Positions 1,569-58,980 of a stretch of 64,000 bases of DNA are shown one piece after another. Within the stretch, counting starts at the first letter, position 1. Each line of letters opens with the position of its first letter. Location: IMG/VR virus record IMGVR_UViG_3300032334_002567, positions 124,001-188,000 of that record; one strand, given 5' to 3'. Below the pieces are notes generated by a model that saw only the letters and a list, made by a program, of their open reading frames with translations, did not search any database and was not told the DNA's origin. The position numbers were made by a program, and so were the translations under genes.

Positions 1569-2975
1569 ATGAAAACCTGCGAAATCGTCGGCTTTGAACA
1601 TCTTCATCTTCATACGGATTTTTCATTATTAGATGGCTTCGGCCTCGTAGAGGAATACGCCCAACGTGCTCCTCAAATTAATCAGAAATTTCTTACTGTG
1701 AGCGATCACGGTATGCTTGGTGCTGTACCAAGACAAATAAAAGCATGTGAAAGAATAAATGAAAAGAAGGGTAAAGATACTCTATCCCCGATCTTTGCCG
1801 CAGAACTGTACATTAACCGCCTTCAACCAGAATCAAACTGTTTAGAAGACGTTCAAAAATTTGTTGCAGATTTAAATGAAGAAGAAAAAAATGAGATTAA
1901 AGCTAGTCCACATCTTTTAGCAATTGCTTACAACGATATTGGCTATAAGAACCTCGTCAGGCTCACTAGCTGGGGATGGACTAAAGGATTCTATAGAAAG
2001 CCAAGAGTCAATTATGAACAGCTTTTAAAGCATAAAGAAGGCTTGTTCTTCACTAGTTGCTGTTACAACAGTGAAGTAGGCAGGGCCTTTGATAAAGGCG
2101 GCGAAGAAGCAGCATATGCCGCTATTGAACGATATATAGAAATGGTTGGTAAAGACCATTATTTCTTGGAATTAATGCTTCTAGACTTTAAGAAGCAAAA
2201 GCCTTATGACGCTTTTATAATTAAAGCCCATGAAAAGTATGGTTTACCATTGATTTTGACTAATGATTGCCATTATTGCAATCAGGAAGACAGTAAGTTC
2301 CAAAGACTTATGTTGATGGTTCAAACAAATAGGACCGTTCAAGAAATACAAAGAGCTATAGCAGCAGATGATACTCAAGACTTTTTTGAGCTTCAGGATG
2401 CTAGCTTGTGGATGAAAAGCGAAGAAGAACTAAATCAAAAGTGGTTAGATCATTATTCTGACACAATACCCTATGAATTGTTCTGTGAAGCTAAGAAGAA
2501 CACTGTAAAGCTTTGTGAAAAAGCCAAAGGCGTTCAGCTAGATAGAAGCTTGAAACTTCCTAATCTTCCAGATGCAGATGAAGTTCTTAAAGACGAAGTT
2601 ATGAAGGGCTTCATTTCTAGAAATCTTCCAAAAACTAAAGAATATTTGGAAAGATTGAAAGAAGAATACTCCCTCATAACAAGGAAAGGCTTTTCTAGTT
2701 ACTTCTTAATACAAAAGAAGATGACAGATGAAGCAAGAAGAGTTTGTGCTAGCTTGTTAGGTTGGGGGGATGGTAGTCAAGCCGTGGGGCCTGGGCGGGG
2801 GAGTGCTGCTGGAGCTTTGACTTGTTATTGTTTAGGAATAACCAACGTAGACCCAGTAGCAGAAGGTCTTCTATTTAGTCGTTTTATGAGTGAGGCAAGA
2901 GGTGGAAGATCTATATCTTTAGAATTTAAGAATATGGATCCTTTGCCTGCTAACGAAGTTTTTGATGGAAACTGA
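1569..2975 (+). CDS. dnaE: DNA polymerase III alpha, N-terminal part (PHP domain plus start of palm)
   Basis: HLHLHTDFSLLDG, SDHG, GFYRKPR, TNDCHY, VGPGRGSAAG, LGITNVDP, LLFSRF; ends before the PDID catalytic motif. Confidence 0.92.
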   Translation: MKTCEIVGFEHLHLHTDFSLLDGFGLVEEYAQRAPQINQKFLTVSDHGMLGAVPRQIKACERINEKKGKDTLSPIFAAELYINRLQPESNCLEDVQKFVADLNEEEKNEIKASPHLLAIAYNDIGYKNLVRLTSWGWTKGFYRKPRVNYEQLLKHKEGLFFTSCCYNSEVGRAFDKGGEEAAYAAIERYIEMVGKDHYFLELMLLDFKKQKPYDAFIIKAHEKYGLPLILTNDCHYCNQEDSKFQRLMLMVQTNRTVQEIQRAIAADDTQDFFELQDASLWMKSEEELNQKWLDHYSDTIPYELFCEAKKNTVKLCEKAKGVQLDRSLKLPNLPDADEVLKDEVMKGFISRNLPKTKEYLERLKEEYSLITRKGFSSYFLIQKKMTDEARRVCASLLGWGDGSQAVGPGRGSAAGALTCYCLGITNVDPVAEGLLFSRFMSEARGGRSISLEFKNMDPLPANEVFDGN

Positions 2976-7094: not shown

Positions 7095-7444
7095 GGGGTC
7101 GCACTGGTATCGACGTAGTACAAGGAGATATTGGTGGCACGCCGAGGTTGATCGAAAGGCCTCGTAAAAATTCGATCACGTCTTAACTGACGAAGTTTCT
7201 TACGCAATGGCTGCCTGAGAAGGCAACCACAAACTTAGGAAGCCACGCAAGAAGCGTCCAAAAGTTTGTCGCAAAATCTTGCTGGTTTCAATTGGTCAAC
7301 TTAGTTGAAACGAGATTAATAGGTTGAAAAGATTCTTAGACTTTTGTTCGTTGTAGTCGAAAGAATCTTATGAACAACGAAACAAGCGTGTAGAGGCCAT
7401 ATTGAGTTTGCTTACGGACAGGGGTTCGACTCCCCTCGACTCCA
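7095..7444 (+). ncRNA. ssrA: tmRNA, tag peptide (A)DEVSYAMAA
   Basis: Acceptor stem GGGGTCG/CGACTCC with G3.U; T arm AGGGG-TTCGACT-CCCCT; pk1-like region then TAACT resume context; tag frame 7189-7218 ends MAA-TGA; 3' end reads CTA, so CCA is not encoded. Confidence 0.95.
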
Positions 7445-7446
7445 CT

Positions 7447-7482
7447 AAAAGGAGGACTACGAAAGTGGTCCTCCTTTTTTTT
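7447..7482 (+). terminator. rho-independent terminator after tmRNA
   Basis: AAAAGGAGGACTAC-GAAA-GTGGTCCTCCTTTT followed by a T run. Confidence 0.85.
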
Positions 7483-8316: not shown

Positions 8317-8388
8317 TGCGAGGTAGCATAACGGTAATGCAGCAAACTGTTAATTTGTAAAATGTCAGTTCGACTCTGACCTTCGCAG
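8317..8388 (+). tRNA. tRNA-Asn(GTT)
   Basis: Acceptor TGCGAGG/CTTCGCA; anticodon arm GCAAA-CTGTTAA-TTTGT; T arm GTCAG-TTCGACT-CTGAC; no encoded CCA. Confidence 0.92.
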
Positions 8389-9794: not shown

Positions 9795-9865
9795 GCGGAA
9801 ATAGTTTAATGGTAGAACTACCGTCTCCAAAGCGGTTGGTGAGGGTTCGATTCCTTCTTTCCGTG
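9795..9865 (+). tRNA. tRNA-Trp(CCA)
   Basis: Acceptor GCGGAAA/TTTCCGT; anticodon arm ACCGT-CTCCAAA-GCGGT; T arm GAGGG-TTCGATT-CCTTC. Confidence 0.92.
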
Positions 9866-9997
9866 CTTTTGGTGATTTTCCTGAGCGGTCAAAAATCACT
9901 CACTACTTTTAAAACACAGGTTAAAAGGAGAAAAAGAAAAAACAAAAAAGTTTTAATCTCTATATAATATAGGTTCTTTTACATGGAGGTTTAGATC

Positions 9998-11989: not shown

Positions 11990-14710
11990 ATGCAATTGTC
12001 TGATATTTGCATCCAAAAATTGTCTGAGAAAAAACTAAATGATTTTGAACATAAAAAGCGTTTAAAGTGGGAGCTAGAAGAAGTCGCAGCAAAAGATAAA
12101 GAATCTTATTTCCTTAATCTTTACAAAAATAAAACCAGATATTCAAAGAATCAAAATAATCTTCTAATTTGCTGGTTGCTAGGAATAGCACCAGATTTTG
12201 ATATAAAGAATGATCCAAATTGTTTTTATGGTGAATATCCTGATATTGATGTAGATTTTATTCCTCAAATAAGAAATTACATAAAAGAAGATTGGGCTCC
12301 CAAGTTTTTTGGTGAAGAATACGTATGCAATATAGGAAATTATACTACTTTTGGCATTAAGTCTGCACTTATAGACATGGCTAGAGTCCACGGAGAAAGC
12401 AGAGAAGAAGTTTTGGGTTTAACCAAAAACCTTGATGCAAAGGATGACGAAGGTAAGGCGATGACTTGGGACGCAGCGATGAAGCTGTATCCTGAATTGA
12501 AAAAATATTGTGAAACTCATCCAGAAATCGCTGAGTCTGCTAAGAAATTATTAAATAGAAATCGTGGAATGGGCGTTCACGCCGGAGGTTTGATTATATC
12601 AAAAACTCCACTTCCTGATTTGGTTCCTCTTGTAAAAAGGAAAGACAATCCACAGGCTTCATCTTGGGTAGAAGGATTGCATGGGCAAGATTTACAGCCC
12701 GTAGGCCTTGTTAAGTTTGATTTACTTGTTGTATCTAACTTGTTGCAGATTGCCAAGTGTTGCGAGTTGGTCAAGAAGAGGCATAAAGTAAATAACATAT
12801 GTGCCTTAGAAGGACAATCAGATTGGAGTGACGTTGAAGCTTGGCGTAATGATTCTTTAGCTTTAGAAATGGCAAACTCTGGCGATCTTAAGGGGATATT
12901 CCAGTTTGATAGTGAAACTGTACGCAGCATGTGTCGTTCTGGTGGTGTGGATAGGTTTGAAGATCTTGTAGCTTATACAAGCTTAAATAGACCTGGCCCA
13001 CTGAACATGAAGATGCAAGAAAGATACATTGAACGCAAAAGAGGAAGAGAAAACTTTTTCCTGCATCCAATACTTCAGCCAATCTTAGGTAAGACTTATG
13101 GCGTTATTCTCTATCAAGAACAGGTAATGAGAATATTAAATGCTGTTGGTGAAATACCCTTGAAAGATTGTGAGTTGGTTCGTAAAGCTATTTCCAAAAA
13201 GAAGATTGAAAGCTTTATCAAATATAAAGAAATATTCATAATTAATGGTCAAAAGAATCTAGAGGTTAGCGAGAAAGAAATAGAACATCTTTGGAACCAA
13301 ATTGAAGCTTTTGCTGAATATGGATTTAACTTAAGCCATGCCGTTGCTTATACATACATTTCTGCTTATTTACTTTACCTAAAATCTCATTATCCGCATG
13401 AGTTCTATACAAGCATATTAAGTTGTGAGAATTTAAGCGACAAGATAAAAGATTATAAGATGGAAGCTAAAATTCATGGTGTTAATGTGGTTAGAGTTGA
13501 CGTCAATAATTCTAGAGTAGACTTTGATCTTCAAGGTGATGAAATATATTTTGGTCTTTCAAATGTAAAGGGGATTGGCGAGGGTCCTTCTCAAAGGATA
13601 GTTGACCAACAGCCTTATAAAAACTTTGAAGATTTTCTCGACAGATTCGGCACAGACGCCAGCGTTCTTAAGCCTTTGATTGGATTGAGATGTTTCCAAG
13701 AAAGAGATCCCATAACTCTTTGGAAGTTCTCTGAAGTTTATAAAAACTTTGTAAAGAAGAACGAAGACAAGAAAAAAAGATTTTTGCTTTCTTTGGAAAG
13801 GTATGAGAGTGAGTTTAAGGATTTATTCCCAGATGAAACTATGTCTTTGGCTGAGGTAGAAGAGGCGATTGGTTCTGGCCATTGGTCAAGATATGACGTT
13901 GATGAAGAGCGTTATGTTGAAACAAATACAGAATGCTCTGCTGATGAAGAAGGAGCAGTTTCAAAAACAGTTAACGGCACAGTTGAATTAGATTGTGGAC
14001 TTACGATAGAAAAAGAAGTTATTAAGTACTACAAAAAGACGAAGATTAAAAAGTCTTTTAATAAGCTGAATGAGCTTAAAAAGCTTATCCAAAAAAGAAA
14101 AAGAACTATAGAGAAGCACAAAAAGGTAGAAGGCGACAAGCCAACTTTGAATAACTTTAATCCTCATGAACAGTTCGTGAATGAGGATTTAGAGTTAGAA
14201 CTGCAAGATATTATTGCCTGTGAAAATAAGTATTACGGTTTTTCATGGATACATCCCTTAGAAAATAGTCCAGATTATAGTGGTAATTTGACTTTTGATA
14301 ACCTTAGAAATTCTACGGATGTATCAGTTGGCCCAGTTGAAATTCGTGTAATAAAAGCGAATAAAACAAAAAGCAAAAAAGGCACTGTATACTTCCAAGT
14401 GTCAGCTGAAGACGTCACGGGCCAAGAAAACAAGATAATAGCTTGGCAGGATGATTGGGATCGTTGGTCTGAAGAATTGTCACAGGATAACTTACTTAGG
14501 ATACGGCTTCAGCCACCTTCTAATGGCTTTTCTACTTTTACTTTAGAAAGTAACAGGGGGAGTGCTAAGTGGAAAAACATTAAGAAGTATGAAGACAAAA
14601 AAGATGACATAAGAGTTGTTGTTTTGAGAAAAGGCGAGACTCAAAATAAGATTGTCTCTGATGTTGATTTGATTGAACAGTTTGAAGAATGTATTATGGA
14701 GAAAAAATGA
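11990..14710 (+). CDS. dnaE: DNA polymerase III alpha, C-terminal part (catalytic palm, fingers, HhH, OB)
   Basis: YPDIDVDF, HAGG, GLVKFDLL, GIFQF, RPGP, YQEQVM, YGFNLSHAVAY, GLSNVKGIG. Confidence 0.93.
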   Translation: MQLSDICIQKLSEKKLNDFEHKKRLKWELEEVAAKDKESYFLNLYKNKTRYSKNQNNLLICWLLGIAPDFDIKNDPNCFYGEYPDIDVDFIPQIRNYIKEDWAPKFFGEEYVCNIGNYTTFGIKSALIDMARVHGESREEVLGLTKNLDAKDDEGKAMTWDAAMKLYPELKKYCETHPEIAESAKKLLNRNRGMGVHAGGLIISKTPLPDLVPLVKRKDNPQASSWVEGLHGQDLQPVGLVKFDLLVVSNLLQIAKCCELVKKRHKVNNICALEGQSDWSDVEAWRNDSLALEMANSGDLKGIFQFDSETVRSMCRSGGVDRFEDLVAYTSLNRPGPLNMKMQERYIERKRGRENFFLHPILQPILGKTYGVILYQEQVMRILNAVGEIPLKDCELVRKAISKKKIESFIKYKEIFIINGQKNLEVSEKEIEHLWNQIEAFAEYGFNLSHAVAYTYISAYLLYLKSHYPHEFYTSILSCENLSDKIKDYKMEAKIHGVNVVRVDVNNSRVDFDLQGDEIYFGLSNVKGIGEGPSQRIVDQQPYKNFEDFLDRFGTDASVLKPLIGLRCFQERDPITLWKFSEVYKNFVKKNEDKKKRFLLSLERYESEFKDLFPDETMSLAEVEEAIGSGHWSRYDVDEERYVETNTECSADEEGAVSKTVNGTVELDCGLTIEKEVIKYYKKTKIKKSFNKLNELKKLIQKRKRTIEKHKKVEGDKPTLNNFNPHEQFVNEDLELELQDIIACENKYYGFSWIHPLENSPDYSGNLTFDNLRNSTDVSVGPVEIRVIKANKTKSKKGTVYFQVSAEDVTGQENKIIAWQDDWDRWSEELSQDNLLRIRLQPPSNGFSTFTLESNRGSAKWKNIKKYEDKKDDIRVVVLRKGETQNKIVSDVDLIEQFEECIMEKK

Positions 14711-23670: not shown

Positions 23671-25278
23671 ATGCCGTCAGTTGCCGAATTTCTGATTGAA
23701 AGACTGGGTAACTTTGGTGTAAAGCACATATTCGGAGTTCCCGGAGATTATCTAGTGGACTTCATCAATAGTGCAAATCAAAGCGAAAAAGTTGTTTTTG
23801 TAAACAATACTGATGAGAATCATTCTGGATTTGCAGCGGATGCTTATGCAAGAGCACATGGTATAGGTTGTGTTTGTGCCACCTACAGTGTTGGAGCATT
23901 AAAATTATGTAATGCCGTGGCAGGAGCATACGCAGAGAAGTCCCCAATAATAGTTATAAGTGGTTCTCCTGGAATTAAAGAGCGTAACGAGGACTTTCTT
24001 TTGCATCATGTTGTTGAAAGCTTTGATAATCAACAAAAAATATTTAAACATATTACATGCCATAGTGTTGTTCTAGACGATGCCACTACGGCTGGCTGGA
24101 AGATTGATAATGCCTTAGAAATTATAAAACAAAATAAGCAACCAATTTATATTGAGTTACCCAGAGACATTGCAACACAGCCGATTAAATATGATGTCTA
24201 CAGACAAGGCACACCAGAAAGCCAAAAGAGCGATGAAGATTCCCTGAAAGATTCTATACAAGAAACCGCTGAGTGGTTGGTTTTATCAAAGAATCCTGTG
24301 ATTATGGTTGGGGTTCAAATCACTAGATTTGGCTTAAATGAACAGCTAATTAGGTTTGCAGAAAAACATAATATTCCGATGGTCACGACACTTTTGAGTA
24401 AGTCATCTGTGAATGAAGACCATCCTCTTTTTGCCGGTGTTTATTGCGGAAATCAAACTAGCCAAGATCATGTTAGAAATATTGTAGACGGATCAGACTG
24501 TCTACTAATATTGGGTGAAATGCTTACTGATATGATTGCTGGGTTCGAAACGCCAAAGTTTACTAAAAAACAAATTATATTTTGCTCAACAGAAGGGTTA
24601 AAAATTAAGAATCATGTTTTTAAAGACGTAAAATTTTTAGATTTCTGTAGAGGGTTTTTTAAGTTAGAGCTTGGCAAAAAAGAAGCCCCATGCATAAAAA
24701 AACCAGAAATTCTAGAATTTGTTCCTTCTAACAATACGATAACTGTTGAAAGATTCTTTCAAAAAATAAACAGTATTTTAAATGAAAAAGTTGCTGTTGT
24801 AGCTGATATAGGTGAATGTCTATTAGGTGCATCTAGTTTGAAAGTTTGTCAACATCATTTTATAAGCCCTGCTTTTTATTGCAGTATGGGCTTAGCGATT
24901 CCCGGAGCACTTGGGCTTCAATTGGCAAAGCCCAATATTCGTCCCATAGTTTTAGTTGGTGACGGAGCTTTCCAGATGTCGCTATCAGAATTAAGTACAA
25001 TACTCCAACATAAATTAAATCCGATTGTATTTGTTTTAAATAATAAAGGATATGCAACAGAAAAATTACTTGAAAAAAATATTTCTATAAGAGACTGGAA
25101 TTACCATAAAGTATTTGATATGATGGTTGGTGGTTTTGGATATAAAGCAGTAACAGAAGAAGAACTAGAAAGTTCTATAAAATTGGCTTTAAATTCAGTT
25201 GAACTTTCTGTTATTAATGTATGTCTAGAAACCGGTTCTTCTTTACTAAAAGGTATCAATAGTTCTCCAAAGGCATAA
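23671..25278 (+). CDS. TPP-dependent alpha-keto-acid decarboxylase (pyruvate/indolepyruvate decarboxylase family)
   Basis: FGVPGDY, E..GFAADAYAR, LLHH, GDGAFQM...NNKGY. Confidence 0.9.
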   Translation: MPSVAEFLIERLGNFGVKHIFGVPGDYLVDFINSANQSEKVVFVNNTDENHSGFAADAYARAHGIGCVCATYSVGALKLCNAVAGAYAEKSPIIVISGSPGIKERNEDFLLHHVVESFDNQQKIFKHITCHSVVLDDATTAGWKIDNALEIIKQNKQPIYIELPRDIATQPIKYDVYRQGTPESQKSDEDSLKDSIQETAEWLVLSKNPVIMVGVQITRFGLNEQLIRFAEKHNIPMVTTLLSKSSVNEDHPLFAGVYCGNQTSQDHVRNIVDGSDCLLILGEMLTDMIAGFETPKFTKKQIIFCSTEGLKIKNHVFKDVKFLDFCRGFFKLELGKKEAPCIKKPEILEFVPSNNTITVERFFQKINSILNEKVAVVADIGECLLGASSLKVCQHHFISPAFYCSMGLAIPGALGLQLAKPNIRPIVLVGDGAFQMSLSELSTILQHKLNPIVFVLNNKGYATEKLLEKNISIRDWNYHKVFDMMVGGFGYKAVTEEELESSIKLALNSVELSVINVCLETGSSLLKGINSSPKA

Positions 25279-25284
25279 AAAATA

Positions 25285-25815
25285 ATGTCGATAGATCCAG
25301 AAGATTTTAGAATTAATTGGAAGATTAAATCTTTTCAAGTTCGTGTTGTCATGGATGACAAACAACTTGGTGTAATGAATACAGATAAGGCAAGAAGGAT
25401 TGCCGAAGAAGCTGGGCTCGACTTGGTTGAAGTCGCCCCAGCAGCAAAGCCACCTGTTTGTAAAATAATTGATTATGGACGCTTTAAATACGAACAACAA
25501 CTTAAGAAAAAAGAGCAGGCTAAAAAACAAAAAGAATCTAAGGTTCAAATAAAGGAATTAAGATTAAGGCCTACTATAGCTGACAACGATATAGCCGTTA
25601 AAATTTCACAAGCCAAGGATTTTTTGGAAGACAGGATGAAAGTTCAGTTTAATCTGATGTTTAAGGGTCAAAGAGAACTGATACATAAAGAAAAAGGTTT
25701 TACAGTTATAAATCATATTATTTCAAGTTTATCTGAGGTTTCTCTTTTAGATAGGCCTCCAAAGCTTGATGGAAATAAAATAATTTGTTGTTTAAGTCCT
25801 AAAGTATCATCATGA
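25285..25815 (+). CDS. infC: translation initiation factor IF-3
   Basis: RIN..I...VRV, LDLVEVAPAAKPPVCKIIDYGRFKYE, KELRLRP. Confidence 0.95.
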   Translation: MSIDPEDFRINWKIKSFQVRVVMDDKQLGVMNTDKARRIAEEAGLDLVEVAPAAKPPVCKIIDYGRFKYEQQLKKKEQAKKQKESKVQIKELRLRPTIADNDIAVKISQAKDFLEDRMKVQFNLMFKGQRELIHKEKGFTVINHIISSLSEVSLLDRPPKLDGNKIICCLSPKVSS

Positions 25816-26822
25816 AGTTCAAAAGTAGTGTTCCAAAAACTCAAGAAGTTTGTTTTTCTCTTTTGAGTAAGTCTGACAAAGGAATATACATTTCTGGACG
25901 CAGAGATATATTGGCCTCATTGTCGCTAAAAAAAGTAAGACAATTACTTAAAGAATTTACTGATACTGTATTTGAAGGTAAAGTAGATGAGACTCATCCT
26001 GATATTTTAGAGATTTTTTATTCTTTGATAGAAGGAAATTTCTCAGAAGAGAAGATAATTTCTTCAATTTCTAAAGTAACTTCTTTTTCTTCTTTTAAAA
26101 CAAGGCTTATAAAAAACAAATCACTTAGAGAAGAAATAAGATCTTTAAAAAATGTTCAAAATATTGATCTATATTCTTTCTGCAAAAATCTACAAAGTAA
26201 TTGGGAGTCATCTCCTGATTCTTTTGATAAATTTATGAGGTTTGATGAGTCTTACAAAAATGATATTAAGCTGGCGAATAAGAAGGCAAAAAGATACGAA
26301 GAAATAGGGTGCATGTTTCTAGCAGATGAAGTTAAGAATTCTATTGGTCTTATAGAAGAGACAAACAAGTTGTATTACGGTTTTCACCCTATCAGTATAC
26401 TTTCAACTTCAACTATTTTAGCTAAGATAATGGGGTTTCACATATCAGAAAACTTGATTGTAGGGCATATTGCTCCGTACGGTGAGGTTCTTTATGAGCC
26501 AAGAGTTTACCCTCTTCGTGCTTTTTTTGATATAGCTTCTAAAAGAACAAAGAAGGCATTAAAGATTTTAGAAAAATTTCCACAAGCAAACGAAAAACCC
26601 ATATTCGACAATTTTTGTGTGGTTGTGCCAAGTATACAGATAATACAACAAAGTGATGAGAACTATTGTTTCTTGGACTGTGAAAATATTTTCCAAACTT
26701 ACAAATCAAAGCATGAAGCATTGAATGCTTTCGACCGTAGCTTAATTAGAAACAAACTCATTCATGCCGTATTGCTCGGTGAAAAAGACGAAAAATGTTA
26801 TTTTTTGAACTTTTTTGATTGA
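25812..26822 (+). CDS. hypothetical protein
   Basis: 336-aa ORF overlapping the infC stop (ATGA). Confidence 0.6.
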   Translation: MKFKSSVPKTQEVCFSLLSKSDKGIYISGRRDILASLSLKKVRQLLKEFTDTVFEGKVDETHPDILEIFYSLIEGNFSEEKIISSISKVTSFSSFKTRLIKNKSLREEIRSLKNVQNIDLYSFCKNLQSNWESSPDSFDKFMRFDESYKNDIKLANKKAKRYEEIGCMFLADEVKNSIGLIEETNKLYYGFHPISILSTSTILAKIMGFHISENLIVGHIAPYGEVLYEPRVYPLRAFFDIASKRTKKALKILEKFPQANEKPIFDNFCVVVPSIQIIQQSDENYCFLDCENIFQTYKSKHEALNAFDRSLIRNKLIHAVLLGEKDEKCYFLNFFD

Positions 26823-26850
26823 TTGCATAAAATATTTAAATGGAGGCTTT

Positions 26851-28335
26851 GTGGAAAAGTATATTGGCAAAAACTTTGTAGATGGTAGTTGGATAGCACA
26901 AAGAGAAGACTTTTTGAGTTACAATCCATCCACAGAAGAAATTATTGGCGGATTTCCTCAGACTAATTCTGAAGAGATAACTCATTCCTTGAAAGTAGCC
27001 AGAAAAGGTTTTGATGTTTGGCGAAAGATTTCAAAAGTAAAAAGAGCAGATTACTTTTGGTCCCTTTGCAAAATTCTAGAGCAGAGAGTTGGCGACGTAG
27101 CTAAAGCAATTTCTTTGGAAACTGGTAAAAACCTTAATGAAAGTAAGGCCGAAGTTATTGAGGCTTTACATATGGCTCAGTATTGTTTTGGAAAAGGGAG
27201 AGAAACTTCTGGAGATATTGTTCCCTCTGAAATTGCAGAAAAAGATTGTTATATTGTTCGAAAACCTAAGGGTGTAGTTGCAATAATAGCACCATGGAAT
27301 TTTCCCTTTGCTATTGGTGGTTTTTGGTGTGCTGGCCCTTCTCTTATTGAAGGAAATACCGTTGTTTTTAAGCCTAGTGAATTAACACCCATGGTCGGAC
27401 AGATAACCGCAGAACTTTTTGATCAAGCGGGATTTCCCAAAGGCGTATTTAACTTAATTCATGGAGATGGTGAGGTTGGGGCCAAAATAGTCAATAGCGA
27501 TTTAGTGGATCATATATGCTTTACAGGCAGTGCAGAAGTAGGCAGGTCAATAAGAGTTGCTTGTGCAAATAGTTGGCACAAAACATGTAGTTGTGAAATG
27601 GGCAGTAAGTCTGCTGTGGTTGTTTTAAACGACGCAGATATTGACTTAGCTGTTTCCGCTTGCATAAATAGTGCTTTTAAACTAAGCGGACAGAGATGTG
27701 TTTCGGCTGGAAGACTATTGATACAAAGAGATATTCTTCCTGAATTTAAGCAAAGATTTTTAAGTGAATTACATTTATCTGGCTATGGCGATCCTTTTAA
27801 TATGGATAAGTCTAAAAATTATTCTGTTTATTTTGGTCCTCTAATTAGTAAAGATCAAAAAGAAAGGGTATCTTGTTTTAATCAAAAGGCGAGAGAAGAT
27901 AAAGATGTGACCATACTTTACGACATAATCAGCCCAGAGCCTAAGGGAAATTACTTAGCACCTTTTGTTTACCAGTGTGAGTGGGGCGATAAAGAATTTC
28001 TAAAAAATGAGGTATTTGGGCCACATCTAGCAATTATACCTTTTGATACGGTAGAACAAGCAATTGAGATTTATAATGATACCGAGTATGGTTTATCTTT
28101 GGGGTTGATAACTAATGACTTTAAAAAAGCACGACAGTTTAGAGACAACTGTGACTTTGGTTTGGGCTATTGGAACGGAGGCAGTATTGCGGCAGAGTCA
28201 CACCTTCCTTTTGGCGGCGTCAAAAAATCTGGCAATGGCAGCCCTTCTGCTGCTGGTTTATTTGATGGTGTTGTTCACAAGGTTACATGGACTGTTAACC
28301 ATGGAGCCTTATCATTTCCACAGGGCTTAAAATAA
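26851..28335 (+). CDS. NAD(P)-dependent aldehyde dehydrogenase
   Basis: PWNFP, KPSE, FTGS, EMGSK, GQRC, EVFGP, PFGG; GTG start after GGAGG (TTG at 26815 is an alternative). Confidence 0.92.
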   Translation: MEKYIGKNFVDGSWIAQREDFLSYNPSTEEIIGGFPQTNSEEITHSLKVARKGFDVWRKISKVKRADYFWSLCKILEQRVGDVAKAISLETGKNLNESKAEVIEALHMAQYCFGKGRETSGDIVPSEIAEKDCYIVRKPKGVVAIIAPWNFPFAIGGFWCAGPSLIEGNTVVFKPSELTPMVGQITAELFDQAGFPKGVFNLIHGDGEVGAKIVNSDLVDHICFTGSAEVGRSIRVACANSWHKTCSCEMGSKSAVVVLNDADIDLAVSACINSAFKLSGQRCVSAGRLLIQRDILPEFKQRFLSELHLSGYGDPFNMDKSKNYSVYFGPLISKDQKERVSCFNQKAREDKDVTILYDIISPEPKGNYLAPFVYQCEWGDKEFLKNEVFGPHLAIIPFDTVEQAIEIYNDTEYGLSLGLITNDFKKARQFRDNCDFGLGYWNGGSIAAESHLPFGGVKKSGNGSPSAAGLFDGVVHKVTWTVNHGALSFPQGLK

Positions 28336-33267: not shown

Positions 33268-33324
33268 TCTTTATTTATATTTGCTACAATGAAAATTTAA
33301 AATAATTTAGCTATTATAATTTGT

Positions 33325-33540
33325 TCACGGCCCTAAAGGGAGGCTTCGAAGGCCTTAATTTCGATAGCTGATTGCTTCGGCTATAAAACCTTTGCAACGA
33401 ATTAATCCTACGACAAAGGAATGGAAATCTATGGTTCCACCAGTTCATAGACGCTGTTGTGCTGCGCAAGCATAAAAAAGTGACGAAATCTCTTTAAAAA
33501 AACGGAAAGCCCAAAAGAGCAGACAATCTTTTAACCGTGA
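33325..33540 (+). ncRNA. putative structured ncRNA (unassigned)
   Basis: 444-nt intergenic gap; TATAAT at 33315; closing stem TCACGG/CCGTGA with nested stems and several hairpins; terminator downstream. Confidence 0.6.
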
Positions 33541-33627
33541 TTCAAAAAAGGATAATTTCGTAAGTTTCATGATTTATCTTGAAACTTAGTTTTTAAAAAA
33601 GCCAAGTTTGCGAATCTACTTCTTTTT

Positions 33628-33660
33628 AAAGACCCAATATCTAATATTGGGTCTTTTTTT
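33628..33660 (+). terminator. rho-independent terminator
   Basis: AAAGACCCAATAT-CTA-ATATTGGGTCTTT followed by a T run. Confidence 0.85.
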
Positions 33661-45483: not shown

Positions 45484-45747
45484 GTGATAAACAACGATTT
45501 GACAAAAAAGGCGATTAAAGAAAACATCCCTATAGCTGAATTAGAGTATCTTGGTCTTCCTTTAAGGGTAATTAATGCCTTGGAAGATTCTAAGCACAAC
45601 TTAATTTATATAAAGGACTTAGTTTCTTTAAATGAGAAACAGATTTCTTCAATAGAGAACTTGGGTTCTTCTGGGGTGAAACAAATTGTTGCTGCTTTAG
45701 AAAAGTTAGGTGATTTGGATAAAGAAATAGCAAGATGGCACAGATAA
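45484..45747 (+). CDS. stand-alone RNA polymerase alpha-CTD-like protein
   Basis: IPIAEL..GLPLRVINALE...IYIKDLV...IENLGSSGVKQI..AL. Confidence 0.8.
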   Translation: MINNDLTKKAIKENIPIAELEYLGLPLRVINALEDSKHNLIYIKDLVSLNEKQISSIENLGSSGVKQIVAALEKLGDLDKEIARWHR

Positions 45748-46475: not shown

Positions 46476-46721
46476 ATGAACGTTTGGCTTAAATTTGGTC
46501 GCGCAAGAAAGATCGCAAAAGAGTTACAGTATAAATATTTTAATCTAGACTATTACTGTCAAGATGAAGAGCTTCTTGAGTTTAAAATACTAGAGGATTT
46601 ATGGTCTCATCCACTTTATACCAATGATATGCTTCTTAATATAGTCTGGGACGAGTATGATAGGCTTTTGTGGCTACAAGTCGGGTTAAATGGCATAGAC
46701 GCAGGATTAGTACCCAGATAG
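46476..46721 (+). CDS. hypothetical protein
   Basis: 81-aa ORF. Confidence 0.5.
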   Translation: MNVWLKFGRARKIAKELQYKYFNLDYYCQDEELLEFKILEDLWSHPLYTNDMLLNIVWDEYDRLLWLQVGLNGIDAGLVPR

Positions 46722-46756
46722 CAAAATTTGAAATTAGCAAAATCTTTTTAGGTCTC

Positions 46757-46784
46757 TTTACAAGTCAAAACCTAGTGCTATACT
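46757..46784 (+). promoter_or_regulatory. sigma70-like promoter nearly identical to the tmRNA promoter
   Basis: TTTACAAGT-N9-GTGCTATACT in both. Confidence 0.7.
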
Positions 46785-46794
46785 AATTTTTGTA

Positions 46795-46924
46795 GGAAGT
46801 ATTAAGAAGGTGCCGAAAGGCACTGGCAACCGAGCAAAAGCCACGGTGCCACCAGCTATCTTTGCTGGGATACGCACAGGAGTGTTTCCTGTGAAAAAGC
46901 GGATTATCCGCCTTCTTGATCTCC
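46795..46924 (+). ncRNA. putative structured ncRNA or 5' leader (unassigned)
   Basis: ATTAAGAAGG/CCTTCTTGAT closing stem enclosing five GC-rich hairpins. Confidence 0.65.
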
Positions 46925-46946
46925 CTTTAACAGAGAGAGAGTAACC

Positions 46947-47153
46947 ATGTTTTTTAGTGCTGCTGTTTTACAAGGACTCAACGATCTTAGGAATAAGAAC
47001 CCTAAGATTGTAGAGGTAACCAAAGAAGAGCTAATTGCTTCTATGAAAAGGCAAGGCTCTGCTGATTGGGAAATAAATATGACTTTGTCTTTCTTGAAAG
47101 GAGGTGCTGCATTAGGCGGTTCCAATGGAGAAAGAATTGTCTTAAAAGAGTAA
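46947..47153 (+). CDS. hypothetical protein
   Basis: 68-aa ORF directly after the structured RNA. Confidence 0.5.
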   Translation: MFFSAAVLQGLNDLRNKNPKIVEVTKEELIASMKRQGSADWEINMTLSFLKGGAALGGSNGERIVLKE

Positions 47154-47165
47154 GATAAAAAGATG

Positions 47166-47202
47166 ATAAACCGGGAGAGGACAACCAACTCTCCCGGTTT
47201 AT
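47166..47202. terminator. perfect 14-bp hairpin
   Basis: ATAAACCGGGAGAG-N9-CTCTCCCGGTTTAT. Confidence 0.7.
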
Positions 47203-47291
47203 AAAACCATATGACGCTAACAAGATATCAACAGAAGTACCGAGTGAACCAAAAGCAAAGATTTAACATCACCACCGAGTGAACCATAAAA

Positions 47292-47600
47292 ATGTTTGAA
47301 CTAGAAAATTTAAAAAAACAGTTGTGCGAAAATTGTTGGTTTGATGCCTGGCTAGTTTTATGTTTTCGTCAAAACGCTAGAACACAAGAAGAACAAATTG
47401 AGATAGCAAAAGAAATGTTGTCCCCGAGTACAAAGTATTGGCTACCCAGAACTATTGCAGGGTTTATGATTTGGAGTATGAAAGCTTATGAAGCAAAAGC
47501 TACTGACTGGTTAAGGTGTCATTTAAGTGAAACAGATTTATCGGCAGAAGAATATCAAAAGCTTAACGAAAATTACAAAAAAAACACTGTTACTTTGTAA
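47292..47600 (+). CDS. hypothetical protein
   Basis: 102-aa ORF. Confidence 0.5.
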   Translation: MFELENLKKQLCENCWFDAWLVLCFRQNARTQEEQIEIAKEMLSPSTKYWLPRTIAGFMIWSMKAYEAKATDWLRCHLSETDLSAEEYQKLNENYKKNTVTL

Positions 47601-47615
47601 AAAAATCAACTACAC

Positions 47616-47643
47616 TTTACAAACTGTTTTGTTGTGGTACAAT
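47616..47643 (+). promoter_or_regulatory. sigma70-like promoter
   Basis: TTTACA-N16-TACAAT with TGn extension. Confidence 0.65.
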
Positions 47644-47661
47644 TATTTTGGAGGCACAAAC

Positions 47662-47913
47662 ATGCAAGCGTCGAGATACTTTTTTGTTTTTGAATACGGA
47701 TTCGGTAGTTTTGGAGCAGCAGCAGATACCGTACAAGAAGCTAGAGAAGTTTTTCGCAAACGTATGAATGGAGAACTGGAATTATCATGTGGATTTCCAA
47801 AAGAAGAAAACTGGAAAAAACTAGCTAGACAGCAAAGACATCTTGAGAGATTCAAAAATTCTGGTTTAGATATTGACTTAATTGAACCTGCGGTTTATTC
47901 TGAACAAAAATAA
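47662..47913 (+). CDS. hypothetical protein
   Basis: GGAGG RBS before MQASRY. Confidence 0.55.
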   Translation: MQASRYFFVFEYGFGSFGAAADTVQEAREVFRKRMNGELELSCGFPKEENWKKLARQQRHLERFKNSGLDIDLIEPAVYSEQK

Positions 47914-47972
47914 CAGGAGATAATTATGTCTTGGCCTTGAGCAAAAGACTTTAGCGGGTTAATTATAATATC

Positions 47973-48187
47973 TTGGGCTGGCATTACTCTGAGAACTTTA
48001 GAATAAGTTGTAGTGTTTCCAAAACCCCGTTTGAGTCAAGCGGACCCTTTTGCGAATGTACCTGCCATTTGTGTATGAGGGTGAATCTTCTTTTATATTC
48101 TGGCTACCGAAAGGGTTCAGAAATAATGGATGGTTTCTTGGCTTCGGTAAGTAGATACCGTGATTGGGGACTTAACAAATAGCCTAA
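47973..48187 (+). ncRNA. putative structured ncRNA (unassigned)
   Basis: TATAAT at 47964; TTGGGCTG/TAGCCTAA closing stem; inner stem and a four-hairpin junction. Confidence 0.6.
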
Positions 48188-48221
48188 ATAAAAAATAGGG
48201 CGAATAGAGTTAAGCGAGACC

Positions 48222-48509
48222 ATGAACTGCGACTCATCAAAAGAATTGCTGGATCAATACATTCGTAGAGTTGCCTATGGAAACTCTATAAAAAATTTTG
48301 ATTCAAAGGGCTTACACGCTGGTAATTCTTTTTATGTTTATTGTGTCCATTGTGGAATCCCGACAGAGGCCTTTCCTGAGAAGCCTCTGGTCGAGACAAA
48401 TTCCATTTGTTCTCAATGCAACTTTTTGTTAAAACAATCACTGTTGGAAATAGCAAAAAATGCCGCCAATAAATTTTTTGGAAATGAACCAAAAAACACA
48501 ACCAGATGA
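48222..48509 (+). CDS. zinc-finger hypothetical protein
   Basis: CVHC and CSQC. Confidence 0.55.
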   Translation: MNCDSSKELLDQYIRRVAYGNSIKNFDSKGLHAGNSFYVYCVHCGIPTEAFPEKPLVETNSICSQCNFLLKQSLLEIAKNAANKFFGNEPKNTTR

Positions 48510-48960: not shown

Positions 48961-49094
48961 TTTAAAAAGGCCAGACTCTTTTCGTATAGAAGAGTCTGGC
49001 CTTTTTTATGTTTAGGCCAATAGGGGCAGTTTGTGCATTTGCATCCACAACAAACTCCTCTTTCGATAAGAAATTTTTTACTTAAAGGCTCCAT
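48882..49094 (-). CDS. DUF5522-like Cys-rich small protein
   Basis: LSKKFLIERGVCCGCKCTNCPY. Confidence 0.6.
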   Translation of the reverse strand: MEPLSKKFLIERGVCCGCKCTNCPYWPKHKKGQTLLYEKSLAFLNQENCFSASIQKEDPSQSGRPASSQR

Positions 49095-58788: not shown

Positions 58789-58980
58789 ATGTTAGTTTTA
58801 AGCAGGAAAAAGGATGAAAGTGTTGTTATTGGCGACAATGTCAGAATTTTTATCGTAGACATTAGGGGTGACACCGTTAGATTAGGCATAGAAGCTCCAG
58901 ATCGCATACCAGTGCATAGGAGCGAAGTTTATGAAGCAATAAAGGAAGCTGAAAGAAAAAAGAGCTATGAAAGAACCTGA
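58789..58980 (+). CDS. csrA: carbon storage regulator CsrA/RsmA
   Basis: [15 protein letters not shown]...VRLGIEAP...VHRSEVY. Confidence 0.95.

What the first reader, a model, noticed from the sequence alone, without database searches (positions are those of the whole stretch)
47964..48187. Third multi-branched RNA with architecture similar to the 33.3-kb RNA
Seen: TATAAT (47964), closing stem TTGGGCTG/TAGCCTAA, side hairpin TCTGAG..TTTAGA, and inner stem GTTTCCAA/TTGGGGAC enclosing four arms: CCGTTTG/CAAGCGG; ACCCTT/GAGGGT with inner GCGAATG/CATTTGT; TTCTGG..CC-GAAA-GG..TTCAGAA; and GGTTTCT..C-TTCG-G..AGATACC. GNRA and UUCG loops and many G.U pairs suggest selection on RNA structure. Length (~215 nt) and topology (outer stem, side hairpin, four-arm junction) resemble 33325-33540 without obvious sequence identity. 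Inference: the three RNAs may be a structurally related, undescribed phage ncRNA class.
Basis: partly seen in the sequence, partly recalled or inferred. Interest (0 to 1): 0.7.

Follow-up and report, generated by a model that had tools for sequence, protein, structure and literature searches.

The report
Orphan structured leader RNA in phage
A roughly 250-base non-coding stretch in a freshwater huge phage is kept far more constant than the genes around it and folds into several hairpins, so it is probably a regulatory leader RNA for the next gene, but it matches no known RNA family and does not form a class with the phage's other RNAs.

Summary
Window 47964-48221 (+) is non-coding. Both overlapping ORFs are frameshifted or stopped in sister haplotypes. 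It differs 3.5-5.0% between haplotypes, against 9-17% for the downstream genes and 13-17% for the 23-nt spacer before it.

Three adjacent hairpins are robust: 48044-48082, 48083-48136 (GNRA-capped) and 48145-48160. Four base pairs change on both sides and stay paired. A local 5' hairpin (47973-48022) fits those substitutions. Alternative global folds lie within about 5 kcal/mol of each other.

Rfam gives nothing. A covariance model finds no second copy in the 381-kb genome or in five related phage records. The 33.3-kb RNA shares neither sequence nor above-chance topology.

The RNA always travels with a strong Shine-Dalgarno site and a 4-codon ORF (MSWP-stop, 47926-47940). Together they sit behind three different upstream cassettes and in front of an SD-less gene for a 95-aa zinc-ribbon protein. 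More distant relatives lack the RNA and have a promoter directly before that gene.

Best reading: a lineage-restricted cis-acting leader RNA with a leader mini-ORF. Its signal is unknown, and no expression data could be obtained.

The parts
47873..47901 (+). Sigma-70-like promoter match TTGACT-17-TATTCT at the left edge of the segment shared with L002. It is not present in the GROS haplotype, so it is not part of the conserved core.
   Evidence: 9/12 match. (homology with L002 resumes at 47863). (GROS differs upstream of about 47911).
47915..47940 (+). Strong Shine-Dalgarno site AGGAG (47915-47919), a 6-nt spacer, then a 4-codon ORF ATG TCT TGG CCT TGA (MSWP-stop, 47926-47940). It is conserved behind three different upstream cassettes.
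   Evidence: Sequence. Alignments show only 1-2 differences in 47911-47940, while the sequence before it is unrelated between cassette types.
47941..47963 (+). Hypervariable spacer with substitutions and 1-2-nt indels. It serves as an internal near-neutral control.
   Evidence: Divergence is 13-17%. X5 differs at roughly a third of positions (loose-end consensus).
47964..47969 (+). TATAAT, where the conserved block begins. It may be a -10 box without a fixed -35. It is split by a 39-nt insertion in one contig (L034).
47973..48022 (+). 5' hairpin: TTGGG/TCCAA, GGCATTAC/GTAGTGTT and AACTT/AAGTT.
Evidence: Consensus fold. Local z is -1.5 (window) and -2.0 (GROS).
48027..48043 (+). It is mutually exclusive with a long-range helix GAGTCAAG (48033-48040) / CTTGGCTT (48137-48144).
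   Evidence: 48028 C>T keeps the pair as U.G. The long-range helix is invariant, so it is untested.
48044..48082 (+). Arm b: ACCCTT/GAGGGT with inner GCGAATG/CATTTGT. It is almost invariant.
   Evidence: z -3.0. It appears in every fold. There is one break (48077 G>T, X5) and one loop insertion (GROS).
48083..48136 (+). Arm c: a long, imperfect hairpin capped by a GNRA loop (GAAA, or GGAA in L002/X3).
   Evidence: z -2.8. Compensatory changes: 48096/48123 goes U-A > U.G > C-G, and 48086/48133 shows U.G, C-G and U-A. Breaks at 48090, 48128 and 48132.
48145..48160 (+). Hairpin d: CGGTA/TACCG.
   Evidence: Two of its five pairs covary: 48147/48158 G-C > A-U (GROS), and 48148/48157 U-A > U.G > C-G (X5, X7). 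Breaks in X6 (C.A) and X7 (48156).
48161..48221 (+). Conserved, A-rich 3' tail running to the start codon. It has no SD-like sequence and no terminator. It contains GAGTTAAG (48207-48214), which could pair with CTTGGCTT.
   Evidence: No differences in L002, X3, X5 or X7. Three to four differences in GROS. No terminator. The alternative pairing costs 3.4 kcal/mol.
48222..48509 (+). Downstream gene: a 95-aa protein with CxxC...CxxC. It is the first gene of a three-gene unit (95 aa, 77-aa membrane protein, DUF2934) that ends at a strong terminator at 48964-49006.
   Evidence: The AlphaFold model has pLDDT 84. The best fold-cluster match is a 'DksA C4-type domain' protein (TM 0.51-0.55, E 0.3), which is weak.

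Best explanation
The element is a cis-acting, structured 5' leader of about 250 nt, preceded by a 4-codon leader ORF. It belongs to the transcript of the downstream three-gene unit (95-aa zinc-ribbon protein, 77-aa membrane protein, DUF2934 protein).

Shown:
- The block from the SD/mini-ORF to the start codon is inherited as one module behind three unrelated upstream cassettes.
- The RNA part is under purifying selection and is non-coding.
- At least arms c and d are maintained as RNA helices.
- No terminator separates the RNA from the gene.
- The gene has no Shine-Dalgarno site of its own.
- In more distant relatives the same gene sits directly behind a promoter.

Inferred:
- Transcription enters from upstream, or from the TATAAT at 47964.
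- The leader folds into a string of hairpins whose long-range closure can switch between alternatives of similar energy. Examples are CTTGGCTT pairing with GAGTCAAG or with the start-proximal GAGTTAAG, and the 5' hairpin versus 5'-3' closure.
- This switching sets how accessible the SD-less start codon is.
- The strongly initiated MSWP-stop ORF either loads ribosomes next to the structure (a standby or re-initiation role) or biases which fold forms.

The signal sensed (metabolite, protein such as the phage's own CsrA, temperature, or translation status) is unknown.
For: Non-coding status: the 69-aa ORF is frameshifted in X5 and GROS, and the 32-aa ATG ORF (48056-48154) gains a stop in X5.

Conservation: the RNA differs 3.5-5.0%, the three downstream genes 8.7-17.4%, and the spacer 13-17%.

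Structure: the R1 consensus model has 98% of cells paired, 14 extra pair types and 4 double-change pairs. Slid controls give 3-8 extra types and 0-2 double changes. The tool count on three haplotypes gives a covariation score of 0.081 against 0.014-0.050 for slid controls. Folding is better only on the + strand, and arms b and c score z about -3.

Module linkage: the same SD, mini-ORF and RNA sit behind the SAM-riboswitch cassette (window, X3, X5), the 273-aa HTH gene (L002, L003) and a 70-aa gene (GROS loci).

Absence in relatives: seven loci with 52-64% identical proteins have the 81-aa gene followed within 0-110 nt by the 95-aa gene. In several of them a -10-like box lies 6-7 nt before the ATG.

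Transcript layout: there is no terminator between RNA and gene, and a strong one after the third gene.

Alternative folds lie within 1-5 kcal/mol of each other.
Against: - No expression data: no RNA run could be listed, so the transcript ends are unknown.
- All haplotypes are at least 95% identical in the RNA. Every helix proposed for the switch (GAGTCAAG/CTTGGCTT/GAGTTAAG) is invariant and therefore untested.
- Five to six substitutions break predicted pairs.
- The whole-element z-score is only -1.4 to -1.8.
- The spacer between the mini-ORF stop and the first helix varies from 28 to 31 nt (67 nt in L034). This argues against tight steric coupling between ribosome and structure.
- The conserved TATAAT would equally fit a separate RNA gene.
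- Lower divergence could partly reflect recent recombination of this segment among strains.
Confidence: 0.45

Rival explanations
1. A stand-alone small RNA gene transcribed from the TATAAT at 47964 (start near 47975). It would act in trans or as a protein-binding or scaffold RNA, with its 3' end made by processing or read-through.
For: The conserved block begins exactly at TATAAT, after a hypervariable spacer. The window's MFE pairs the 5' and 3' ends. The module moves with different neighbours.
Against: There is no terminator or other defined 3' end, and conservation continues unbroken to the start codon. The 5'-3' closing stem is broken in L002/X3. No -35 box lies at a constant spacing. TATAAT is split in L034. 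The SD and mini-ORF upstream of TATAAT are conserved too, which a separate gene starting at 47975 would not explain.
Confidence: 0.2
2. A ligand-binding riboswitch of a new class. This is a special case of the leader model: the hairpin cluster would be an aptamer and the 3' tail the expression platform.
For: The position is right: 5' of an operon, with no terminator and an SD-less start. The 5' half and the junctions are highly conserved (2.5% divergence). Alternative pairings involve the start-proximal tail. The same phage carries a bona fide SAM-I/IV riboswitch 1 kb upstream.
Against: No homologue was found outside one narrow clade. The downstream genes give no metabolic clue. There is no well-defined junction architecture. 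A riboswitch would not need the mini-ORF.
Confidence: 0.12
3. A DNA-level regulatory region (promoters, operators, a recombination hot-spot boundary) whose RNA folds are incidental.
For: It lies at the right border of a cassette-swapping hot spot. It contains promoter-like hexamers. The whole-element folding z-score is weak.
Against: Four pairs show compensatory double changes in two helices. Foldability is strand-specific, with many G.U pairs. About 250 bp of near-uniform conservation is much longer than operator or promoter sites.
Confidence: 0.12
4. A mobile or self-processing RNA, such as a group I intron, another ribozyme, or a relic transposon-guide (omega) RNA, inserted before the gene.
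For: It is present or absent between related phages. It is more conserved than its flanks. It is about 250 nt long and has a GNRA loop. A TnpB gene lies next to a homologue of the upstream 83-aa gene in L016.
Against: No Rfam ribozyme, intron or omega-RNA family scores even at E<=10. No gene is interrupted: homologues of the 95-aa and 83-aa proteins start and end where the window's ORFs do. There is no second copy in the genome and no TnpB or endonuclease nearby.
Confidence: 0.04
5. Protein-coding: the 69-aa TTG ORF at 47973-48182, or another small ORF.
For: The ORF is open in the window.
Against: There is a 1-nt deletion in X5 and two separate 1-nt insertions in GROS. Substitutions show no third-position bias. 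There is no SD. Gene callers called no gene there in 14 contigs.
Confidence: 0.02

Closest known systems
Leader-peptide-containing 5' leaders (ribosome-mediated attenuators such as trpL/tnaC; leader-ORF-controlled mgtA/corA leaders)
   Same: A strongly initiated tiny ORF sits at the 5' end of a long structured leader in front of the regulated genes. Alternative helices have similar energy. The mini-ORF ends Trp-Pro-UGA, a context known from general knowledge to terminate slowly (TnaC ends Pro-UGA).
   Different: The ORF has only 4 codons, too short to act as a nascent-chain sensor of the TnaC type. There is no intrinsic terminator or antiterminator pair. The spacer to the first helix varies in length. 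No amino-acid or ion-related genes lie downstream.
Riboswitches, e.g. the SAM-I/IV aptamer found 1 kb upstream at 46794-46909
   Same: A conserved multi-hairpin RNA directly 5' of a transcription unit in a phage, more conserved than the coding sequence, with a start-proximal tail that can be sequestered.
   Different: It matches no Rfam family. It is known only from near-identical phages. No conserved junction or ligand pocket can be defined, and the ligand is unknown.
Ribosome standby sites / shunt-type leaders (tisB standby site in E. coli; short ORF plus stem structure in the cauliflower mosaic virus 35S leader)
   Same: A short ORF or strong ribosome-binding site lies upstream of a compact structure, followed by a start codon with no SD of its own.
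   Different: This is purely an analogy of layout. Nothing here shows ribosome transfer across the structure.
The window's 33.3-kb RNA (33325-33540)
   Same: Similar length, an intergenic position after a TATAAT, a multi-hairpin MFE fold with 5'-3' closure, and no Rfam family.
   Different: There is no sequence similarity (z -0.6) and no above-chance structural similarity. Model R1 does not hit it. It is followed by a clear terminator, whereas this element is not.

Membership tests
Any Rfam 15 family | Covariance-model score at or near the family's gathering threshold | tested here: not met
   There is no hit in 47964-48221 at the gathering threshold. At E<=10 on 551 nt, the only matches that overlap the region are unrelated eukaryotic families far below their gathering scores (E 3.2-9.5). 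The L003 and L039 haplotypes give no hit in the RNA region.
   Model R1 finds only itself in the 381-kb genome at E<=10. The global alignment z-score is -0.6, and tree-edit distances fall within the shuffle distribution.
   For this element, the closing and inner stems are each contradicted by substitutions in other haplotypes. Alternative closures lie within 1-5 kcal/mol.
Group I intron | Interrupts a gene, with exons that join to a continuous homologous product | tested here: not met
   Homologues of the 95-aa protein begin at the same Met with no N-terminal extension. Homologues of the 83-aa protein are complete at 79-88 aa.
Group I intron | Conserved P3-P9 catalytic core recognisable by RF00028 | tested here: not met
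   No hit at E<=10.
Riboswitch | Aptamer conserved with covariation across diverse genomes | tested here: not met
   It was found only in haplotypes at least 95% identical. It is absent from five related phage records and from all other loci.
Riboswitch | Specific ligand binding that changes the fold | not testable with these tools
   This needs in-line probing, SHAPE or ITC.
Ribosome-mediated attenuator | Translated leader ORF with its own SD upstream of the structure | tested here: met
   AGGAG, a 6-nt spacer, then ATG TCT TGG CCT TGA at 47915-47940. It is conserved in all haplotypes and in three upstream contexts. Translation itself was not shown.
Ribosome-mediated attenuator | Terminator/antiterminator alternative directly downstream of the leader ORF | tested here: not met
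   There is no terminator-like site between 47941 and 48221.
CsrB/RsmZ-type CsrA sponge | Multiple conserved GGA motifs in hairpin loops | tested here: not met
   The RNA has only three GGA motifs, and none lies in a hairpin loop of the consensus model. The best one (48128-48130) is destroyed in L002, X3 and X5. The phage does encode CsrA.
TnpB/IscB omega RNA | Lies at the 3' end of a tnpB/iscB gene, usually in several genomic copies | tested here: not met
   No such gene lies nearby, and the element is single-copy in the genome.

The most novel reading that the evidence does not exclude
The SD/mini-ORF, the compact RNA and the SD-less start codon work together as one device. Ribosomes would be captured by the 4-codon Trp-Pro-stop ORF and handed across, or gated by, the folded RNA to start translation of a gene that is promoter-proximal (apparently leaderless) in related phages. 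That would be a bacterial-virus counterpart of shunt or standby initiation, or a new riboswitch class that needs a leader ORF. It may control a TraR/DksA-like RNA-polymerase-binding protein.
Probability: 0.08. Interest if true: 0.75.

Novelty: new member of a known kind. Interest (0 to 1): 0.35.

Why it matters
Huge phages carry many unexplained intergenic regions. Here one of them is shown to be a selected RNA-level element. It was added, together with a tiny leader ORF, in front of a gene that relatives express directly from a promoter. That is a natural before/after pair for asking how a phage acquires post-transcriptional control. The practical value is limited for now. The element is known only from one narrow freshwater lineage, its signal is unknown, and the broader claim of a new class of related phage RNAs does not hold.

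Tried and rejected
- Known RNA family: rejected.
- Paralogues in the genome, including the 33.3-kb RNA: none found with model R1. Pairwise sequence and structure comparison is at chance level. BLAST of the 33.3-kb RNA against five related phage records found nothing.
- Distant homologues were sought in many ways, all without result:
  - blastn against the phage collection;
  - neighbours' proteins in IMG/VR and JGI metagenomes;
  - homologues of the 95-aa and 83-aa proteins and their contigs;
  - model R1 on five related huge-phage records found through DnaE;
  - exact-pattern scans of viral contigs and genome contigs. The eight hits are chance, because R1 matches only the 17-nt pattern itself.
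  Only near-identical haplotypes were obtained.
- Split gene or intron reading (MSWP joined to the in-frame extension open from 48192): rejected, because homologues start at the annotated Met.
- Read-through, selenocysteine or bypass of the mini-ORF's UGA: rejected, because the spacer has indels that are not multiples of three.
- CsrA sponge: rejected, because the GGA motifs are not conserved.
- Expression: no RNA run was listed.
- Genome-wide z-score scan of all intergenic gaps: the first attempt timed out, and only the window's gaps were scored.
- Function of the 95-aa protein: Pfam and PHROGs are uninformative. PDB fold search found nothing. AFDB clusters gave only a weak DksA C4-type-like match.

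Full report
**Context**

The window is bases 124001-188000 of a 381,443-bp IMG/VR virus record, estimated 79% complete. Near-identical DNA occurs in freshwater and lake metagenomes. The genome uses the standard code, with long + strand ORFs. The window also carries a tmRNA, two tRNAs and a SAM-I/IV riboswitch.

The finding lies in a 308-nt gap. Upstream is an 83-aa gene (47662-47913). Downstream is a 95-aa CxxC...CxxC gene (48222-48509). That gene is followed by a 77-aa membrane protein, a DUF2934 protein and a strong terminator at 48964-49006.

**Checking the observation**

Folding is better than shuffles only on the + strand, and only modestly: z -1.79 against +0.28 on the - strand. Longer constructs give z -1.5 and -0.8. 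Individual arms are stronger: 48044-48082 scores z -3.0 and 48083-48136 scores z -2.8.

No Rfam family matches the region in three haplotypes. At E<=10 only unrelated eukaryotic families, far below their gathering scores, touch it.

**Relatives and the insertion**

The 95-aa protein has homologues at 52-92% identity.

In seven loci with 52-64% identity (L004, L005, L007, L009, L010, L012, L013), the homologue of the window's 81-aa gene (46476-46721) is followed within 0-110 nt by the 95-aa gene. In several of them a -10-like box lies 6-7 nt before the ATG. These loci have no RNA, and model R1 finds nothing there.

In the close clade (87-92% protein identity) the gap is filled by a variable cassette plus a constant module. 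There are three cassette types:
- the SAM-I/IV riboswitch with three small ORFs (window, X3, X5);
- a 273-aa HTH gene (L002, L003);
- a 70-aa gene (twelve 'GROS' contigs).

The constant module begins at about 47911 and has four parts:
- AGGAG, 6 nt, then ATG TCT TGG CCT TGA (47915-47940);
- a 23-nt spacer that is hypervariable and carries indels;
- TATAAT (47964);
- the RNA, running up to the start codon.

Homologues of the upstream 83-aa gene in other contigs have no such RNA behind them.

**Selection**

Divergence from the window, by segment:

| Segment | L002 | GROS |
|---|---|---|
| SD + mini-ORF (47911-47940) | 6.7% | 3.3% |
| Spacer (47941-47963) | 13.0% | 17.4% |
| RNA (47964-48221) | 3.5% | 5.0% |
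| Three downstream genes | 8.7-17.4% | 9.8-11.8% |

The 5' half of the RNA (47964-48082) differs by 2.5% in both comparisons. Logan contigs X3 and X5 show the same contrast.

The 69-aa TTG ORF is frameshifted by a deletion at 48150 in X5 and by two separate +1 insertions in GROS. The 32-aa ATG ORF (48056-48154) gains a stop in X5 through 48077 G>T. The element is therefore non-coding and constrained.

**Structure**

I assembled eight haplotypes: window, L002 (identical to L003), two GROS variants, X3, X5, and the partial X6 and X7.

- Closing stem: 47977 G>A gives an A.C mismatch in L002 and X3.
- Inner stem: 48016 is C, giving a C.A mismatch, in every other haplotype that covers it.
- UUCG arm: it loses its closing pair in GROS (48147 G>A) and has two breaks at 48132.

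A consensus fold instead gives these elements:
- a local 5' hairpin, 47973-48022, in which both of the first two substitutions improve pairing;
- CCCC/GGGG;
- GAGTCAAG/CTTGGCTT;
- arms b and c, and hairpin d.

For this model, 98% of cells pair. Fourteen extra pair types occur, against 3-8 when partners are slid by 1-3 columns. Four pairs change on both sides, against 0-2 in the slid controls:
- 48086/48133;
- 48096/48123, with a U.G intermediate;
- 48147/48158;
- 48148/48157, with a U.G intermediate.

The tool count on three haplotypes agrees: covariation score 0.081 against 0.014-0.050.

There are caveats:
- The model was derived from two of the haplotypes.
- Five or six substitutions break pairs (48077, 48090, 48128, 48132, 48156, and 48148 in X6).
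- All long-range helices are invariant and so untested.
- A consensus fold on a longer stretch gives yet another closure.
- Forced alternatives lie within 1-5 kcal/mol of the MFE.

My conclusion is that arms b, c and d are solid, and the 5' hairpin probably so, while the global junction is undetermined.

**The 'class' claim**

Model R1 finds only the element itself in the whole genome at E<=10. It finds nothing in five related huge-phage records.

The 33.3-kb RNA folds well (z -2.6) and also has no Rfam family. It shows no sequence similarity to this element. Its MFE tree is no closer to this element's than folds of shuffled sequences are. It is also followed by a terminator, which this element is not.

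**Mechanism**

I commit to a cis-acting leader, with confidence 0.45. The reasons are:
- the module is inherited with the downstream gene;
- conservation runs unbroken to the ATG;
- there is no terminator;
- the gene has no SD;
- the only good ribosome-binding site is that of the mini-ORF.

The likely logic is control of start-codon access by alternative long-range pairings, with the mini-ORF acting as a ribosome-loading or fold-biasing element.

The variable spacer argues against tight ribosome-structure coupling, and one contig (L034) has a 39-nt insertion splitting TATAAT. The rivals are listed separately, each with the result that would refute it.

The regulated 95-aa protein models confidently (pLDDT 84) as a long helix, a zinc ribbon and further helices. 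Its best fold-cluster match is a DksA C4-type domain protein (TM 0.51-0.55, E 0.3). Pfam does not support this assignment and PDB gives nothing, so I treat it only as a lead.

**Verdict**

This is a genuine, previously undescribed, lineage-restricted structured leader RNA. The proposed class of three RNAs is unsupported.

Noticed in passing
window 46757-46946: A SAM-I/IV riboswitch aptamer (46794-46909; 52 bits against a gathering score of 41). It sits behind a good promoter match (46757-46784) and in front of small ORFs of unknown function (46947-47153, 47292-47600). The region's folding z-score is -5.8. The riboswitch lies in a cassette that is present only in some haplotypes.
   Followed up: partly
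window 46722-48221 and loci L002, L004-L013, L031-L042: The gap between the conserved 81-aa and 95-aa genes is a cassette-swapping hot spot. It is empty in distant relatives, and the close clade has three different gene cassettes there.
   Followed up: yes
L034:1704-1742: A unique, GC-rich 39-nt insertion splits the TATAAT in one contig. It has no other copy in the genome or in the fetched loci. It may be a real variant or an assembly artefact.
   Followed up: partly
window 1569-2975 and 11990-14710: DNA polymerase III alpha appears to be split. PHP plus the first part of the NTPase domain are in one ORF. The rest (NTPase, finger, HHH) is in another ORF 9 kb downstream. The tmRNA, two tRNAs and several genes lie between them.
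   Followed up: no
window 7095-7447, 8317-8388, 9795-9866: The phage encodes a tmRNA (134 bits), tRNA-Asn(GTT) and tRNA-Trp(CCA). The mini-ORF studied here ends Trp-Pro-UGA, a stop context prone to stalling.
   Followed up: no
window 58789-58980: A phage-encoded CsrA homologue (Pfam E 3e-25). A related contig (L007) also carries one.
   Followed up: partly
window 45484-45747: An 87-aa protein that consists only of an RNA polymerase alpha C-terminal domain (Pfam E 1e-8). It is conserved at the same place in the GROS contigs.
   Followed up: no
window 23671-28335: Metabolic genes in the phage: a thiamine-pyrophosphate enzyme (535 aa) and an aldehyde dehydrogenase (506 aa; Pfam E 4e-121).
   Followed up: no
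window 33315-33660: The 33.3-kb RNA folds well (z -2.6, or -3.6 with flanks). It has no Rfam family and is followed by a hairpin and a terminator at about 33628-33660. No homologue was found in five related phage records.
   Followed up: partly
L016:796-1941: A TnpB (OrfB_IS605) gene lies next to a homologue of the window's 83-aa gene in another phage-like contig.
   Followed up: no
L007:~905-951, L010, L013, L009 (upstream of the 95-aa homologue): In RNA-less relatives the -10-like box lies only about 6-7 nt before the ATG. This suggests that the gene is expressed there as a leaderless or near-leaderless mRNA.
   Followed up: partly
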